A stretch of DNA of 63,511 nucleotides, counting the filler, from Octopus bimaculoides (taxonomy: Eukaryota): assembly GCF_001194135.2 (NCBI RefSeq). It is 4 parts of 3 records of this genome, joined end to end, with 100 filler letters (N's around TTAATTAATTAA, not from the genome) between each part and the next. Parts side by side here need not be neighbours in the genome. Positions count along the whole stretch, not along the records: positions 1 to 20,257 come from NC_068986.1; 3 more parts are not named here. One strand, written 5' to 3'. The position numbers were made by a program, and so were the translations under genes. A model generated the notes under the pieces. That model had not been told where the DNA came from. It saw nothing but the letters and a program-made list of their open reading frames with translations, and did not search any database. Shown one piece after another: positions 3,839-18,874 of this stretch. The number at the start of each line of letters is the position of its first letter. Positions within the stretch are counted from its first letter, which is position 1.

Positions 3839-4687
3839 CTGTGTATTGAAGAGTATAGTGCGACAGTCTGACTACTTGTGGTGTGTACGGTACGAAGTAC
3901 GTAAACGTTAGATACAGTCAGTTAATGAATTGATGGATTAGAAAGAGGAAGAAGAAAACAGTTTCGTTGACACGTTGTCTGAGCCTTCGAGAATATTGAA
4001 CAGAAGGTAGAAATGCTCCCAACAAACTAGCCTCTACTAAAACAACTAAAGCGGTCCAGGTGGTGGTGGTCTAGGCGGACGACGGATTAAATTGATATTG
4101 GTGTGTGAGCCCCCAAGAGAGATAGGAACAAGTATATCTACGTCCACAGATGTTACCGCCGTGATTAATTAGATCTATGTTCATAGCTAAGCCACGTTAA
4201 AACAGAACTGTGTTCACAATCATTCCAGTCATGAACATTTTATTCATTTGGTTGTTTGTTGGTTTTTTGGTTAACATCTAAGAATGCTTATTCTATTATA
4301 CCTGCTCTTTGTTTAAGGCATGTAGGATTATTCATTGTTATTTCTAGCAGAATAAGTAACGTCTAGAATCTAGAATCTAGAATCGTTGCATGTATGTCTA
4401 TCTTTTTCATAGATATATAGGGATAAACAATCTTCTATGTGCTGTCCAGAATACATGAGGTGTTCGTCTGGTATGTTTATTTTTTTGTTTATTTCTATGT
4501 GCATTGACTATACTATACTGACAAGTGAAGAGTATAGATTACTATAATGATCACGAAATCGGCGATCTATAGTTCAGTCTGTTTTTAAAAGGCTAGCTTC
4601 CTTGAAGGCTACATTTCCTCGCATTCGGTAAAAATGTGTTTATTACGGTAGTTAACGTGAGGCATTCTTGTATAGTTNNNNNNNNNN

Positions 4688-7386: not shown

Positions 7387-7560
7387 TATTCAGATATAGA
7401 CTCCGATGAGACTAGCAATTACTGTCTCTAGACAACTCTCAGAATACAATAATCTAAAACATAATCACTATTTGGATTTGCCGTTACCATGTTTCGAAGC
7501 AGCCGTTTTCAAAGGCCATAACCACACATCAAATTTCATCCGGAATTGAAGAGATTATGC

Positions 7561-8012
7561 GCAGGAGTGGCTGTGTGGTAAGTAGCTTCCTTACCAGCCA
7601 CAAGATTCCGGGCTCAGTCCCACAGCGTGGCACCTTGGGCAAGTGTGTTCCGCTATAGCCTCTAAAGCCTTGTGAGTGGATTTGGTAGACAGAAACTGAA
7701 AGACGCCCATCGTATATATATGTATACATCTATATATATATATATNNNNNNNNNNNNNNNNNNNNNNNNNNNNNNNNNNNNNNNNNNNNNNNNNNNNNNN
7801 NNNNNNNNNNNNNNNNNNNNNNNNNNNNNNNNNNNNNNNNNNNNNNNNNNNNNNNNNNNNNNNNNNNNNNNNNNNNNNNNNNNNNNNNNNNNNNNNNNNN
7901 NNNNNNNNNNNNNNNNNNNNNNNNNNNNNNNNNNNNNNNNNNNNNNNNNNNNNNNNNNNNNNNNNNNNNNNNNNNNNNNNNNNNNNNNNNNNNNNNNNNN
8001 NNNNNNNNNNNN

Positions 8013-8052
<40 letters not shown>

Positions 8053-8330
8053 GTGTGTGTGTGTGTGTCTGTGTGTGTGTCTGTGTGTGTGTGTGTCTGT
8101 GTGTGTGTGTTTGTGTGTCTGTGTTTGTTCCCCCCCAACTTCGCTTGACAACCGATGCTGGTGTGTTTAGGTCCCCGTAACCTAGCGGTTCGGCAAAAGT
8201 GAACGATAGAATAAGTACCTGGCTTACAAAGAATAAGTTCTGGGGTCGATTTGCTCGACTAAAGGCGGTGCTCCAGCATGGCCACAGTCAAATGGCTGAA
8301 ACAAGTAAAAGAGTAAAAGAGTAAACGAGT
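7561..8330 (+). mobile_element. SINE family B (tRNA-like head, internal (TA)/(TG) microsatellite, AAAAGAGT tail)
   Basis: gcaggagtggctgtgtggtaagtagc head; ggtgctccagcatggccacagtc...gaaacaagtaaaagagt tail. Confidence 0.85.
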
Positions 8331-8485
8331 AACTCTTTATGAAGAAAGGAAAACATTTCTTAGACGCGCTGGTTTTGCCAGAAACGCACCCTTTTTTATC
8401 GAGTATGATCTCCATACATCTAGCTTGCATTGATTATGGCTGATTAACTTTTAAGTTAATGCAGTAAGACAAAGATTTAACTCAC

Positions 8486-8551
8486 CGGTGGTGAAACAGG
8501 TAGAATCTACAACACTGATGCGTTTCATTGGCTCACAGTCACATCTGCTTT
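8486..8551 (-). CDS. Probable internal exon, EGF-like Cys-rich segment of the same minus-strand gene
   Basis: 66 nt, phase 1-1. Acceptor ttaattttcttgtccaacgtatag|AA, donor CCG|gtgagt. Translates SRCDCEPMKRISVVDSTCFTT, resembling the CxCx...C half of an EGF module. Confidence 0.5.
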
Positions 8552-11181: not shown

Positions 11182-11575
11182 AGCAAGCATGGCTCTGTGG
11201 TTAAGAATCTTGCTTTGCAATCACGTGATTTTGGTTTCCGTCCCACTGCCCGGCACCTTAATCTAGTGTTTTGTATTATAGCCCCGAGCCGATCAATGCC
11301 TGGAGAATGAATTTCGTAGATGGACATTATATGGAAGATCGTCTTGTATATTTATGCTTCTGTGTCCTTGAATTTGTGTTTGTTCTAACACCAACACGGA
11401 TTGAAAATCGGTGTTGGTTTGTTTATACTCCTGCTACTTAGCATCAAGGCGAAAGAGCTAGATAGAATAAAGTACCAGACTTTAAATAACGAGTTACTGG
11501 AGTCGATTTGTGGTATAAATGCTTTCCTGACAATGCTCCAGCATGGCCGCAGACCAATAACAGAAACAAAATAAT
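11182..11575 (+). mobile_element. SINE family B, older copy
   Basis: Diverged head and tail are both recognisable. Confidence 0.7.
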
Positions 11576-11669: not shown

Positions 11670-11971
11670 TATTTTCAGTTATTTGACTGCGGCCATGCTT
11701 GAGCGCCGCCTGTAGTTGAACAAATCGACCCCAGAGCTTATTCTTTGTAAGCCTAGTACTTATTCTATCCGTCTCTTTTGCCGAACTAGTAAGTTATGGG
11801 ACGTAAACATACCAACACTGGATGTCAAGCGATGGTGTGGGGACAAACACACACCCAAACACACAAATATGTACAAATATATATATATGTGTATGTATAT
11901 ATATGTATATATGTATATACGTATATATACATATATATATGTATATATGTATATATACATATATATATATG

Positions 11972-12170: not shown

Positions 12171-12229
<59 letters not shown>

Positions 12230-12395
12230 CACACGACAGGCTTCTTTCAGTTTCCCTCTACTAAATCCACTCACAAGGCTTTGGTCGGCCCAAGACTATA
12301 GTAGAAGGTACATGCCCAAGGTGTCACGCAGTGGGACTAAACCAAGAACCTTGTGGTTGAGAAGCAAGCATCTTACCACACAGCCAGTCCTGCGA
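11670..12395 (-). mobile_element. SINE family B with expanded internal microsatellite and nested Penelope-type fragment
   Basis: Tail at 11670-11850, head at 12230-12395. Confidence 0.8.
12070..12174 (+). mobile_element. Ribozyme-less copy of the same Penelope-type repeat, nested inside a SINE's internal microsatellite
   Basis: ctttctgtattcccgagcgttaaactaatacatcctttt...cgtaaattctcc matches the reverse complement of 57510-57608. Confidence 0.65.
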
Positions 12396-15700: not shown

Positions 15701-17090
15701 ACTTCGGTATTTCATTGCTGGTGATGATACGGAAAAGAACTCATTGTTTCTCCTCAAGTCTGGTGTCGAGCAAGCAAACGAGTATTGATAGAGAAGCCTT
15801 GTGTTTCAAAGAATGTGACACCTAGACACTGAGTTTTGGGACCTTCCCTTCGAGTAAAGTTAACGAATGACAGTATCAAGCAGGCATCCCATCTGCCGAA
15901 TCAATTCTCTAGTGAACTGGCACGGATTTTCGAAAATGGGCTCATACAATCGATATTCAATGAATTGGACGTGTCTGCCGGAACGCAGAGATTCTCAGGT
16001 CGAATTTACAGTTCTGAGATTTGTGAAAGTTATTTTTGTGCCATTCTTACAGTACAAATATCTTGAGTGATTTTTGCAGGTATGGATCCTTGATTGAAAA
16101 CGAAGGATAACAGATATCACATCTGCCATTTTTGTTTTTATACTTTGCACTCTATCATCATATATACCTGATAAGAGAATACATACACCGAAATTTCAAA
16201 AGCGAAAGACAAGACACGAATGGAGCGACAGAAAATTGGAAAAAACTTTATAAATAAAAAGACAAATAAAAAACTTTTCTCGCTTGAAATAACACCGGAA
16301 AGAAACGAACGAATTTATCTGACAACCAAGTCTAGAAGTACGACTGTATGTGCTCGTGCGCGTTGGTATGTCTTTGGAAAGCTTATTTAGCACTTTTAAA
16401 TAATCTAATTTTCCCATTTTTTCCCATTTTGTTCTCAACTCATGTTTTGTCTAAATATAACTGTTCTCCTGCAAATATTCTCCATAGGTTAACGTGTTTG
16501 ATTTCATTGAATTAGTGAACATTTGTCATAAATCAGTCACCGGTCTAATCTTCGAAATCCCACATAAGCAACTGAAGACATAATTTTTAATGTCGTCATT
16601 ACAGCTGTCATTGAATTTGTGGTTAGTTCTTCGTTTTCTTTTCGCTTTCTTTAATTCTTTATTCAATGACCTCCTCGTCATTGTTCGCTTCTTTTTAGTT
16701 TTTTTCCATTGTCCACAATAGTTTGCTCTGATATCAAGTTAGAAAAATCGATCTTGTGGCCTTGTGAAAATTAATAATGCATAAAAGCTGACATAATGAA
16801 AAAGAGATTTATGGAAATTAGAATCAGTCGTTTGATACGATAGAACAGCACGTGGCTGAATAGATAAGGTAAGAGATGAAGTAAGAGATAATGAGGAAAA
16901 AGGTCCAAGTTTCGTGTCTTATATCAGTTTGTATGGTCAATATACTAAAACAGCTGAGACTGGTCAACTTCTTTAAAACCTTCATGAGTCACTGCATTAA
17001 ACTAGGAGTATGCAGCGTAAACTAATGGGTGCAATGTTACACCGAAGTGCTGTCATCGACATATATATATATATATAAATATATATATAT

Positions 17091-17573
17091 ATAAAGTCTA
17101 GTATATTGCCACTTAAGTGTGGCTGACCACTAGGGGTAGATGTTACTGTTGCTTTTAGCCCCAGGAGGACATCTCCTCTAGCTGGCTTATCGACACACTA
17201 CTGTGTCCTGTTTGCCAAGGGAAGTTATCCCTCCCATCATGATCTGTAGCACGAACGGACCCGGGTTTCAGGGTTATTTCCCTTCGTCGGCGTCCGATAG
17301 CCACTGATCCTTGATGAGAGAGATAATTTCTTGGCAATCTTATATATACTTTTCCAGTGAAATTCTTCACTGATATCGAAAAGGTGAAAACAAGCAATGT
17401 TAATTCTCTAAATGAAGTATTAACAGTAGCTGCACGATAAAGTGTAGTATATTGCCACTTAAGTGTGGCTGACCCCTAAGGGTGGATGTTACTGTTGCTT
17501 TTAGCCCCAGGAGGACATCTCCTCCAGCTGGCTTATCGACACACTACTGTGTCCTGTTTGCCAAGGGAAGTTA
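17091..17573 (-). mobile_element. Non-LTR retrozyme-like element: 346-bp unit plus 137-bp terminal redundancy, carrying one type I hammerhead
   Basis: Direct repeats 17091-17227 and 17437-17573 (5 mismatches in 137). Hammerhead at 17252-17296. No coding capacity. Several internal hairpins. Confidence 0.75.
17252..17296 (-). ncRNA. Type I hammerhead ribozyme motif, near-complete (U4C core variant)
   Basis: Minus strand: CGGACG-CCGACGA-AGGG AAAUAA CCCU-GAAA-C CCGG G-UC-CGUUCG. Stem I 6 bp, stem II 4 bp, palindromic stem III ACCCGGGU, GUC cleavage triplet. Confidence 0.8.
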
Positions 17574-17945
17574 AAATTTCTAGTTAACTAGAGGATAGCA
17601 CAGAAACATATGTAGGTTATTTCAAAATTATTTTTGTGATTTATAACTTATAATCAATTTATTTGTACTGTAATGTTTTAAAAGAAAGTTTTTACACTTT
17701 TCTATAAAATAAAAAAAATTTTTTCATACATCCAATTCTCTTCATTTTCTTTCCTTCAATATCAATAGTTCCAATAATCCCTAACATATCCAAGCGACCT
17801 TCGCATTATATGATAGTGATTAACGAGGGGAATTTCTTGGATTACATAATCCTTAATGAGGTTATAACTTCCTCGAATTTGATGGAAATATAGAGGTGCG
17901 TAAGGCGACTCAAGAAATCTCAAATGCGACATTTTATTATTGTAC

Positions 17946-17977
17946 CTGAAGAGACGCAGAACGGGTTGAAACCTGTA
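17946..17977 (+). ncRNA. Hammerhead motif remnant
   Basis: CUGAAGA-GACGC AGAAC GGGUU-GAAA-CCUG-UA. Core intact, stem II with one mismatch, stem I not evident. Followed by AATAAA. Confidence 0.5.
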
Positions 17978-18874
17978 CTGTACCCAATAAAGCCTATTAC
18001 AAATTCCATCTCCTATTTCATTAATGCTGTTATTATATAATATATATGTATGTATATATATATATATATATGTATATNNNNNNNNNNNNNNNNNNNNNNN
18101 NNNNNNNNNNNNNNNNNNNNNNNNNNNNNNNNNNNNNNNNNNNNNNNNNNNNNNNNNNNNNNNNNNNNNNNNNNNNNNNNNNNNNNNNNNNNNNNNNNNN
18201 NNNNNNNNNNNNNNNNNNNNNNNNNNNNNNNNNNNNNNNNNNNNNNNNNNNNNNNNNNNNNNNNNNNNNNNNNNNNNNNNNNNNNNNNNNNNNNNNNNNN
18301 NNNNNNNNNNNNNNNNNNNNNNNNNNNNNNNNNNNNNNNNNNNNNNNNNNNNNNNNNNNNNNNNNNNNNNNNNNNNNNNNNNNNNNNNNNNNNNNNNNNN
18401 NNNNNNNNNNNNNNNNNNNNNNNNNNNNNNNNNNNNNNNNNNNNNNNNNNNNNNNNNNNNNNNNNNNNNNNNNNNNNNNNNNNNNNNNNNNNNNNNNNNN
18501 NNNNNNNNNNNNNNNNNNNNNNNNNNNNNNNNNNNNNNNNNNNNNNNNNNNNNNNNNNNNNNNNNNNNNNNNNNNNNNNNNNNNNNNNNNNNNNNNNNNN
18601 NNNNNNNNNNNNNNNNNNNNNNNNNNNNNNNNNNNNNNNNNNNNNNNNNNNNNNNNNNNNNNNNNNNNNNNNNNNNNNNNNNNNNNNNNNNNNNNNNNNN
18701 NNNNNNNNNNNNNNNNNNNNNNNNNNNNNNNNNNNNNNNNNNNNNNNNNNNNNNNNNNNNNNNNNNTATATAACAGTACATATATACGATGTTGACCAAG
18801 GTAAACACATTGGAATGAATAAATCAACTTTAATAAATCACCATAAAGAATATTGCGGTAATTACCTTGAAAAG

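What the first reader, a model, noticed from the sequence alone, without database searches (positions are those of the whole stretch)
17091..17573. Candidate cephalopod non-LTR retrozyme: 346-nt hammerhead circRNA unit integrated as a 1.4-mer
Seen: a non-coding 346-bp unit followed by a repeat of its first 137 bp (17091-17227 vs 17437-17573, 5 mismatches). A near-perfect type I hammerhead sits on the minus strand between the repeats. The unit is rich in hairpins: GCCAC-ttaagt-GTGGC, GACACA-ctac-TGTGTC, CAGTGAA-attc-TTCACTG and a consensus CCCCTAGGGG palindrome. It abuts a (TA)n tract. Established: non-LTR retrozymes of cnidarians, mussels and salamanders are short tandem units of a few hundred nt, each with one type I hammerhead; they are processed into abundant circular RNAs and are thought to use Penelope-like element enzymes. 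Inference: the terminal redundancy is what reverse transcription running more than once around a 346-nt circle would leave, so this is a genomic copy of a viroid-like circRNA family. I do not know of one described in cephalopods, but that needs a literature check. This locus has only one ribozyme, so monomer release would need multimeric source loci elsewhere.
Basis: partly seen in the sequence, partly recalled or inferred. Interest (0 to 1): 0.9.

Follow-up and report, generated by a model that had tools for sequence, protein, structure and literature searches.

The report
Decayed hammerhead-repeat (retrozyme-like) insertion, 1.4 units
This is one old, probably inactive genomic copy (1.4 units of 346 bp) of a short non-coding repeat that carries a hammerhead self-cleaving RNA motif, a kind of element already known from mussels, corals and salamanders, so it is at most a new member of a known kind.

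Summary
Positions 17091-17227 and 17437-17573 are a 137-nt direct repeat with 5 mismatches and a 346-nt period. On the minus strand at 17296-17252 lies a type I hammerhead-shaped motif. It has a 6-bp helix I, a 4-bp helix II and a 2-bp helix III with a tetraloop inside the 8-nt palindrome ACCCGGGU. The site GUC|C falls at 17258/17257.

The motif is not intact. Core position 4 is C instead of U, and Rfam reports no hammerhead family for it, even when only 91 nt are searched at E<=10.

The 346-nt unit has no ORF of note. It is richer in G+C than its flanks (43% vs about 30%). As a circle it folds far better than shuffles (z about -7.6). It abuts a (TA)n tract and shows no target-site duplication.

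The best reading is a decayed copy of a non-LTR-retrozyme-like repeat, probably mobilised by Penelope-like elements. The 1.4-mer does not prove a circular template, because internal initiation by the Penelope-like-element RT on a linear multimer would give the same product.

I could not test family copies, multimers, circular RNA or the cephalopod origin. All DNA and protein searches for relatives returned nothing.

Verdict: new member of a known kind, modest interest.

The parts
17059..17090 (.). (TA)n microsatellite that abuts the 3' end of the element (element orientation = minus strand). It is the likely AT-rich target site.
   Evidence: A random breakpoint lies at or inside a (TA)>=6 tract with probability about 0.036 in this piece.
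17091..17227 (-). Repeat copy R1. In element orientation these are the 3'-terminal 137 nt of the insertion.
   Evidence: 137 nt, 96.35% identical to 17437-17573.
17228..17436 (-). Non-repeated 209 nt of the 346-nt unit. It holds the hammerhead motif and one arm of the long-range helix.
17437..17573 (-). Repeat copy R2. In element orientation these are the 5'-terminal 137 nt (a partial upstream unit).
17252..17296 (-). Type I hammerhead-shaped motif. Helix I is 17296-17291 with 17257-17252. The core CCGACGA is 17290-17284. Helix II is 17283-17280 with 17273-17270, with loop 2 AAAUAA at 17279-17274. GAAA is 17269-17266. Helix III with its tetraloop is 17266-17259. C17 is 17258.
   Evidence: Rfam does not recognise it.
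17289..17289 (-). Core position 4 is C instead of the conserved U. This is the only deviation from CUGANGA...GAAA...UH.
   Evidence: the hit has 1 core mismatch.
17257..17258 (-). Predicted self-cleavage junction GUC|C. It is intact in the genomic copy.
17259..17266 (-). 8-nt palindrome ACCCGGGU spanning A15.1 to U16.1. Two copies could form an intermolecular 8-bp helix III (duplex -14.9 kcal/mol), the dimer mode of newt-type and other metazoan type I hammerheads.
   Evidence: The architecture is described in PMC4209133.
17212..17250 (-). 5' arm (RNA sense) of the long-range helix stack that brackets the hammerhead. It pairs with 17300-17337 as 5 + 4 + 15 + 7 bp segments. The innermost 5 bp extend helix I beyond an internal loop UAU/U.
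17300..17337 (-). 3' arm of the same long-range helix stack.
17108..17123 (-). Hairpin GCCAC-loop-GUGGC within R1 (repeated in R2).
17192..17207 (-). Hairpin GACACA-loop-UGUGUC within R1 (repeated in R2).
17355..17372 (-). Hairpin CAGUGAA-loop-UUCACUG in the unique part.

Best explanation
Positions 17091-17573 (minus orientation) are one old, non-coding insertion of 1.4 units of a 346-nt hammerhead-bearing repeat. The repeat is of the kind described in animals as non-LTR retrozymes, or hammerhead satellite repeats.

Inferred life cycle of the family (not shown here):
- Tandem source loci are transcribed.
- Paired hammerheads form an extended helix III through the ACCCGGGU palindrome and cut at GUC|C.
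- This releases 346-nt monomers, which a host ligase can circularise.
- The RNA folds into a compact, highly paired structure.
- A reverse transcriptase and endonuclease supplied in trans, most likely from Penelope-like elements, nicks AT-rich DNA.
- It then copies more than one unit length of a circular or multimeric template.

At this locus the copying would have started next to a (TA)n tract, at ...ACUUUAU, and stopped 483 nt later. This copy itself is probably inert. It has a single ribozyme of a type that needs a partner, a C at core position 4, and 3.6% divergence between its two repeated parts.

Shown: the anatomy, the statistics of the motif and of the fold, the absence of coding capacity, and the position at a (TA)n tract.
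Inferred: retrotransposition, the Penelope-like-element partner, an active family consensus, and circular RNA.
For: - The repeat has a 346-nt period.
- The hammerhead-shaped motif has 6-bp, 4-bp and 2-bp helices plus a palindromic tetraloop. PMC4209133 gives exactly this as the canonical metazoan type I architecture. PMC7229834 calls '2 bp capped by a tetraloop' typical of invertebrate hammerheads.
- The motif is far above chance: 0.04 expected per 17.5 kb at this quality. None of 9 sequence-only matches to core plus palindrome in 2.9 million viral contigs had helices I and II.
- The circular monomer folds with MFE -120.7 kcal/mol, z = -7.7, in hammerhead polarity. The other monomer version gives z = -7.6. 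The plus polarity gives about -5.8, and seven flanking 346-nt controls give +0.9 to -3.0.
- G+C is 43-50% against about 30% in the flanks, which suggests an inserted block.
- No Pfam domain was found in six frames of 16100-18077.
- The unit size matches mussel repeats of 350-390 bp and newt/axolotl repeats of 330-350 bp (PMC7229834).
- Copies longer than one unit are what the published model predicts (PMC7761336).
- The element ends at an AT-rich microsatellite, the target type of Penelope-like-element endonucleases (PMC11167929, PMC8557442).
- A simple tandem duplication cannot make a 137-nt repeat separated by 209 nt. Copying a periodic or circular template can.
Against: - Rfam reports no hammerhead family at any threshold tried.
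- Core U4 is C.
- The isolated 61-nt domain prefers a non-catalytic fold (-24.6 kcal/mol against -7.4 for the hammerhead fold).
- There is only one locus. No second copy exists in the 20-kb piece.
- No relative was found in any searchable collection, so there is no family, no covariation and no multimer evidence.
- No target-site duplication is visible.
- Adjacency to (TA)n has about 7% chance probability for two ends.
Confidence: 0.6

Rival explanations
1. The locus is a remnant of a Penelope-like element proper. On this reading it is a heavily truncated or internally deleted partial-tandem insertion whose pseudo-LTR sequence is all that is left, not an independent non-autonomous retrozyme family.
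For: Penelope-like elements insert as partial tandems with 5' truncation, carry hammerheads, and cut AT-rich or microsatellite targets (PMC11167929, PMC8557442, PMC4209133). A 2026 preprint finds vertebrate non-LTR retrozymes to be sister to pseudo-LTRs of these elements (10.64898/2026.07.22.740005). Most dispersed hammerheads of these elements are single and 'probably related to truncated PLEs' (PMC4209133).
Against: No RT or GIY-YIG signal lies in 16100-18077 or in the ten longest open segments of the piece. The repeats are 209 nt apart, not about 2.5-3 kb. The hammerhead lies outside the repeated segment. Its architecture is canonical (helix II 4 bp, helix I 6 bp, helix III present). Metazoan Penelope-like elements carry the minimal form instead: helix II 7-8 bp, helix I 4-5 bp, an extra unpaired base, and no helix III (PMC4209133).
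Confidence: 0.15
2. The locus is a stump of a DNA-level satellite array. On this reading a 346-bp tandem repeat that happens to encode a hammerhead was amplified by unequal crossing-over and later deleted down to 1.4 units, with no retrotransposition of this locus.
For: Hammerhead repeats were first described as satellite DNA (newt satellite 2; PMC7229834). The preprint's discussion proposes local amplification by unequal crossover. No target-site duplication is visible here. The two repeat copies differ by 3.6%.
Against: The block is isolated, has sharp borders and a G+C step, and sits exactly at a microsatellite edge. There are no further degenerate units on either side. Dispersed monomers and short copies are common for retrozyme families (preprint).
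Confidence: 0.1
3. There is no ribozyme element. On this reading the hammerhead resemblance is fortuitous within a G+C-rich, hairpin-rich repeat of another origin, for example an unclassified SINE-like element with a partial duplication.
For: Rfam covariance models do not report it. One conserved core base is wrong. The local MFE is a different hairpin that pairs GGACGCCG with CGGGUCC. My descriptor also picks up two other one-mismatch hits in the piece (4518-4567 and 8440-8524), so it is permissive.
Against: The expectation for a hit of this quality is 0.04 per 17.5 kb. Four features that the descriptor did not require also fit the canonical metazoan type I motif (PMC4209133): the 8-nt palindrome at helix III, the exact 6/4/2-bp helix lengths, the A-rich 6-nt loop 2, and helix I continuing beyond an internal loop. 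The unit size and strong fold fit retrozymes as well.
Confidence: 0.12

Closest known systems
Metazoan non-LTR retrozymes (Cervera & de la Pena 2020, PMC7229834), especially the Mytilus galloprovincialis repeats of 350-390 bp
   Same: Both are short non-coding units of about 350 bp with G+C below 50%. Both carry one type I hammerhead per unit with a 2-bp helix III capped by a tetraloop. Both have a highly self-paired predicted circular monomer, genomic copies longer than one unit, and no LTR, PBS or PPT.
   Different: Only 1.4 units and one hammerhead are present here, and that hammerhead has a core change (U4 to C). No evidence exists for tandem multimers, copy number, expression or circles. 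No sequence comparison with mussel units was possible.
Newt/salamander satellite 2 and axolotl Rtz_331/353 repeats
   Same: The unit is about 330-350 bp. The type I hammerhead has a very short helix III and a palindromic loop, so it is active mainly as a dimer. The ACCCGGGU palindrome here would allow the same mode.
   Different: Those repeats form very large tandem arrays (up to about 120,000 motifs) with demonstrated transcripts and circles. Here there is a single dispersed, decayed copy in an invertebrate-like, microsatellite-rich scaffold.
Pseudo-LTRs of Penelope-like elements with minimal hammerheads (PMC4209133, PMC11167929)
   Same: Both show a partial-tandem insertion structure with a terminal direct repeat, a hammerhead motif, and integration at AT-rich or microsatellite DNA. 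These elements are the likely source of the enzymes.
   Different: There is no RT/GIY-YIG ORF, and the repeats are 209 nt apart. The hammerhead is canonical, not minimal, and lies between the repeats rather than in them.
Plant LTR retrozymes (PMC4918200)
   Same: Both are non-autonomous, hammerhead-bearing elements proposed to spread through circular RNA.
   Different: The plant elements have type III hammerheads inside true LTRs, a PBS and PPT, 4-bp target-site duplications, G+C above 55% and units of 600-1000 nt. None of these features is seen here.
Schistosoma Sm-alpha hammerhead repeats (from my own knowledge and as cited in PMC6155905)
   Same: Both are SINE-like dispersed or tandem repeats of a few hundred bp with a type I hammerhead. 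As I recall it, Sm-alpha has an A-rich loop 2 resembling AAAUA and a helix I interrupted by an internal loop.
   Different: The resemblance is recalled, not tested. No sequence homology was examined.

Membership tests
Hammerhead ribozyme, type I | Conserved core C3 U4 G5 A6 N7 G8 A9 ... G12 A13 A14 A15.1 ... U16.1 H17 | tested here: not met
   All positions fit except U4, which is C at 17289. By established knowledge of hammerhead mutagenesis, U4 belongs to the CUGA uridine turn and changes there strongly lower activity (my own knowledge, not tested).
Hammerhead ribozyme, type I | Three helices around the core, with helix I open | tested here: met
   Helix I is 6 bp, helix II is 4 bp, and helix III is 2 bp plus a tetraloop. 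Chance expectation is 0.04 per 17.5 kb.
Hammerhead ribozyme, type I | Score at or above the Rfam gathering threshold for a hammerhead family | tested here: not met
   No hammerhead hit was found at gathering score, at E<=10 on 901 nt or at E<=10 on 91 nt.
Hammerhead ribozyme, type I | Self-cleavage at H17 | not testable with these tools
   This needs in vitro transcription of monomeric and dimeric constructs.
Canonical metazoan type I hammerhead (dimer-dependent) | Helix I about 6 bp, helix II about 4 bp, helix III 1-2 bp capped by a 2-4 nt palindromic loop | tested here: met
   The helices are 6/4/2 bp and the loop is CCGG. ACCCGGGU is an 8-nt palindrome with a self-duplex of -14.9 kcal/mol. 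The definition comes from PMC4209133.
Metazoan non-LTR retrozyme | Short non-coding unit (about 170-400 bp) with G+C below 50% and no LTR, PBS or PPT | tested here: met
   The unit is 346 nt with 43% G+C. No Pfam domain was found. There are no TG..CA termini and no target-site duplication.
Metazoan non-LTR retrozyme | Tandem arrangement, from dimers to multimers, each unit with a hammerhead | tested here: inconclusive
   Only 1.4 units with one hammerhead are present at this locus. The preprint reports that monomeric and short copies are common.
Metazoan non-LTR retrozyme | Multi-copy family in the genome | not testable with these tools
   No second copy exists in the 20-kb piece. The source genome is not searchable. 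There were 0 hits in the metagenome, prokaryotic-genome and viral collections and in the protein database.
Metazoan non-LTR retrozyme | Stable, highly self-paired monomer | tested here: met
   The circular MFE has z = -7.7 and -7.6, against controls of +0.9 to -3.0.
Metazoan non-LTR retrozyme | Expression as linear and circular monomeric RNA | not testable with these tools
   No RNA data are available.
Penelope-like element (pLTR-ORF-pLTR) | ORF with RT and a GIY-YIG endonuclease between the direct repeats | tested here: not met
   Only 209 nt lie between the repeats. There is no RT/EN signal in six frames of 16100-18077 or in the longest open segments of the piece.
Penelope-like element (pLTR-ORF-pLTR) | Minimal hammerhead (long helix II, no helix III) located in both repeats | tested here: not met
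   The motif has the canonical architecture and lies in the non-repeated 209 nt. The definition comes from PMC4209133.
Plant LTR retrozyme | Type III hammerheads in LTRs, with PBS, PPT and a 4-bp target-site duplication | tested here: not met
   The motif is type I and lies outside the repeats. No target-site duplication is visible.
Infectious viroid-like or deltavirus-like circular RNA | Ribozymes in both polarities | tested here: not met
   The plus strand of the unit has no hammerhead-descriptor hit and no ribozyme family in Rfam. The sequence is embedded in genomic DNA.

The most novel reading that the evidence does not exclude
The locus may be a fossil of a still active, lineage-specific family of about 346-nt hammerhead circular RNAs in a cephalopod genome. 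That group has no described retrozyme in the literature I could search. The family consensus would carry an intact dimer-dependent hammerhead, be expressed as abundant circles, and be mobilised by Penelope-like elements into (TA)n tracts.
Probability: 0.3. Interest if true: 0.5.

Novelty: new member of a known kind. Interest (0 to 1): 0.3.

Why it matters
If a live family stands behind this copy, it would add another major animal group to the hosts of hammerhead circular-RNA retroelements. It would also give a compact test case, 346 nt with a clear 3' junction at a (TA)n tract, for one open question: do such elements integrate from circles, or from linear multimers through internal initiation by the RT of Penelope-like elements? 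The distribution of end points among copies would answer this. Permuted ends point to a circle or multimer with free start sites. A fixed 3' end at ...ACUUUAU next to AT-rich DNA points to site-specific internal initiation. On its own, this single decayed locus adds little to what is known.

Tried and rejected
1. Rfam on the whole piece at gathering score, then at E<=10 on 901 nt and on 91 nt, gave no hammerhead.
2. Exact-pattern DNA scans used a 28-nt hammerhead segment and a 22-nt segment of the repeat. They gave 0 hits in JGI metagenome contigs, GTDB genome contigs and IMG/VR. Both of the first two collections are now exhausted.
3. I searched a chimera of all open segments of the unit in six frames against the 5.8-billion-protein database, hoping for spurious ORFs called on other copies. 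It gave 0 hits.
4. For organism identification I searched a chimera of SINE-derived ORFs and did an exact-protein look-up of a window ORF. Both returned nothing.
5. A generic scan of IMG/VR for CTGANGA...GAAACCCGGGTC, meant to obtain comparators, gave 9 hits. None had helices I and II, so they were chance matches and useful only as a negative control.
6. A search for a target-site duplication found nothing longer than 6 nt, and nothing at the junctions.
7. I checked the 5 R1/R2 differences against the predicted helices. Two keep pairing as G.U in the hammerhead polarity and two break pairs, which is uninformative.
8. An LTR-element reading is rejected: there are no TG..CA ends and no target-site duplication, and the ribozyme is not in the repeats.
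9. A simple tandem duplication is rejected, because it would give adjacent copies rather than 137-nt repeats 209 nt apart.
I used X-masked six-frame translations instead.

Full report
**Observation**

The 137-nt direct repeat 17091-17227 / 17437-17573 is real: 5 mismatches and start-to-start spacing of 346 nt. The homology may begin 3 nt earlier, at ATA 17088/17434. The 'CCCCTAGGGG' palindrome is a reconstruction, because neither copy has it. A (TA)n tract at 17059-17090 abuts the left end. No other copy of the 483-bp block exists in the 20-kb piece.

**The hammerhead**

Read on the minus strand, the motif is CGGACG-CCGACGA-AGGG-AAAUAA-CCCU-GAAA-CCCGGG-UC-CGUUCG, at 17296-17252.

- Helix I has 6 bp, one of them G.U.
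- Helix II has 4 bp.
- Helix III has the A15.1-U16.1 pair and a C-G pair around a CCGG tetraloop.

Cervera & de la Pena (PMC4209133) describe the canonical metazoan type I hammerhead as helix I 6 bp, helix II 4 bp, and helix III 1-2 bp capped by a 2-4 nt palindromic loop, active as a dimer. This motif has exactly that build. A15.1 to U16.1 reads ACCCGGGU, an 8-nt palindrome whose self-duplex is worth -14.9 kcal/mol. In the full fold, helix I continues beyond an internal loop (UAU/U) into a further 5 bp and then a long helix stack.

Three caveats apply:

- Core position 4 (17289) is C, not U.
- Rfam reports no hammerhead family at gathering score, at E<=10 on 901 nt or at E<=10 on 91 nt.
- The isolated 61-nt domain prefers a different fold: -24.6 kcal/mol against -7.4 for the catalytic fold. 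That is the behaviour described for dimer-dependent hammerheads, but it is also what a non-ribozyme would show.

I wrote my own descriptor: core with at most 1 mismatch, helix I >=4 bp, helix II >=3 bp, helix III >=1 bp. In 100 dinucleotide shuffles of the piece it gives 0.22 hits, and 0.04 at the quality seen here. A chance hit inside this particular 346-nt unit is therefore unlikely, at about 0.001-0.004. As a side control, 9 sequence-only matches to core plus palindrome in IMG/VR all lacked helices I and II.

**The unit as a whole**

The circular 346-nt monomer in hammerhead polarity has an MFE of -120.7 kcal/mol, against -78.7 +/- 5.5 for shuffles (z = -7.7). The alternative monomer built from the other repeat copy gives z = -7.6. 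The plus polarity gives -5.95 and -5.67. Seven 346-nt control segments of the same piece range from +0.9 to -3.0. A stack of 5 + 4 + 15 + 7 bp (17212-17250 with 17300-17337) brackets the ribozyme.

G+C rises from about 0.31-0.35 on the left and 0.23-0.33 on the right to 0.44-0.50 inside the block. Six-frame translation of 16100-18077 gives no Pfam family of note, and neither do the ten longest non-repetitive open segments of the whole piece. There is no reverse transcriptase or GIY-YIG endonuclease here. The 209 nt between the repeats cannot hold one.

**What it is**

Size, composition, lack of coding capacity, one canonical type I hammerhead, a strongly self-paired monomer and a copy longer than one unit together match the published description of metazoan non-LTR retrozymes (PMC7229834; review PMC7761336). 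The closest in size are the mussel repeats of 350-390 bp and the newt/axolotl repeats of 330-350 bp.

The locus differs from the pseudo-LTRs of metazoan Penelope-like elements. Their minimal hammerheads have a 7-8 bp helix II, a 4-5 bp helix I, an extra unpaired base and no helix III, and they sit in both repeats (PMC4209133).

A simple tandem duplication cannot produce 137-nt repeats separated by 209 nt. Copying a periodic or circular template from an arbitrary start to an arbitrary stop can. In element orientation the 3' end (...ACUUUAU) joins the (TA)n tract with 3-4 nt of possible microhomology. The 5' end (UAACUUCC...) joins AAATTT. No target-site duplication is visible.

Endonucleases of Penelope-like elements prefer AT-rich DNA or microsatellites (PMC11167929, PMC8557442). 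A random breakpoint lies at a (TA)n tract with probability about 0.036 in this piece, so the adjacency is only modest support.

**How it most likely works, and what is inferred**

- Shown: the anatomy, the statistics and the context described above.
- Inferred from the families named: tandem source loci are transcribed. Two hammerheads pair through the palindrome and cut. Monomers are ligated into circles. A reverse transcriptase and endonuclease in trans, probably from Penelope-like elements, integrates copies at AT-rich sites.

That is the published model (PMC7761336), but it is not the only route. The anole Penelope-like element initiates reverse transcription internally on unprocessed multimeric RNA, without need of hammerhead cleavage (PMC11167929). 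That route gives the same 1.4-mer with an intact GUC|C junction. One locus cannot separate the two.

This copy is probably dead. It has a single dimer-dependent ribozyme, a U4-to-C change, and 3.6% divergence between its two repeat copies.

**Rivals**

- A truncated remnant of a Penelope-like element proper (0.15).
- A stump of a DNA-level satellite array (0.10).
- A fortuitous motif in an unrelated structured repeat (0.12).

The preprint 10.64898/2026.07.22.740005 argues that vertebrate non-LTR retrozymes derive from pseudo-LTRs of Penelope-like elements and are often found as dispersed monomers. The first rival and the best explanation therefore shade into each other.

**Limits**

Exact-pattern scans of metagenome, prokaryotic-genome and viral contigs found nothing. 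A six-frame ORF chimera of the unit found nothing among 5.8 billion proteins. I could not verify the cephalopod origin.

**Literature**

None of the retrozyme papers I read names a cephalopod. However, type I hammerhead repeats are said to occur 'from molluscs to arthropods' (PMC7229834). The giant squid genome paper lists 235 Rfam Hammerhead_1 loci and Penelope elements (PMC6962438). Craig et al. report families of Penelope-like elements in squid and octopus (PMC8557442).

**Verdict**

This is a new member of a known kind, represented here by one decayed copy. Interest is 0.3. The most novel reading not excluded is an active cephalopod family of 346-nt hammerhead circles: probability about 0.3, interest 0.5 if true.

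Noticed in passing
window 4512-4573 (+): A second hammerhead-shaped match. It has helix I ACTATA/TATAGT, core CTGACAA (G8 replaced by A), helix II GTGA/TCAC with a 22-nt loop, GAAA, a 3-bp helix III with loop GGC, then UC. Two hits of this quality occurred in none of 100 shuffles. Rfam does not recognise it. No repeat structure surrounds it, and an N gap follows at 4678. It could be another decayed hammerhead element or a chance match.
   Followed up: partly
window 8440-8524 (+): A third, weak descriptor hit with core CTGATTA (1 mismatch), helix I 4 bp, helix II 3 bp and helix III 1 bp. It is within the range expected by chance (0.22 per piece).
   Followed up: no
window 7560-7745 + 8104-8304 (-), 11673-11865 + 12199-12394 (+), 11375-11569: A dispersed SINE-like repeat family at 68-83% identity between copies, with a microsatellite or an N gap in the middle of each copy. 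ARAGORN finds no tRNA-like head. From memory it resembles an abundant octopus SINE. A protein-level search for relatives found nothing.
   Followed up: partly
window 1-20257: This is a draft-scaffold piece. Seven N gaps total about 2.7 kb (13%). (TA)n, (CA)n, (GATA)n, (AAT)n and (GA)n microsatellites are very dense, with 22 (TA)>=6 tracts alone. Several gaps are flanked by microsatellites, so their true content is unknown.
   Followed up: no
window 17900-17945 (+): CTGAAGAGACGCAGAACGGGTTGAAACC resembles a hammerhead core (CUGANGA ... GAAA) about 330 nt from the element. It has no helix I and no proper helix III, and it fails the descriptor. I judge it a chance resemblance.
   Followed up: yes
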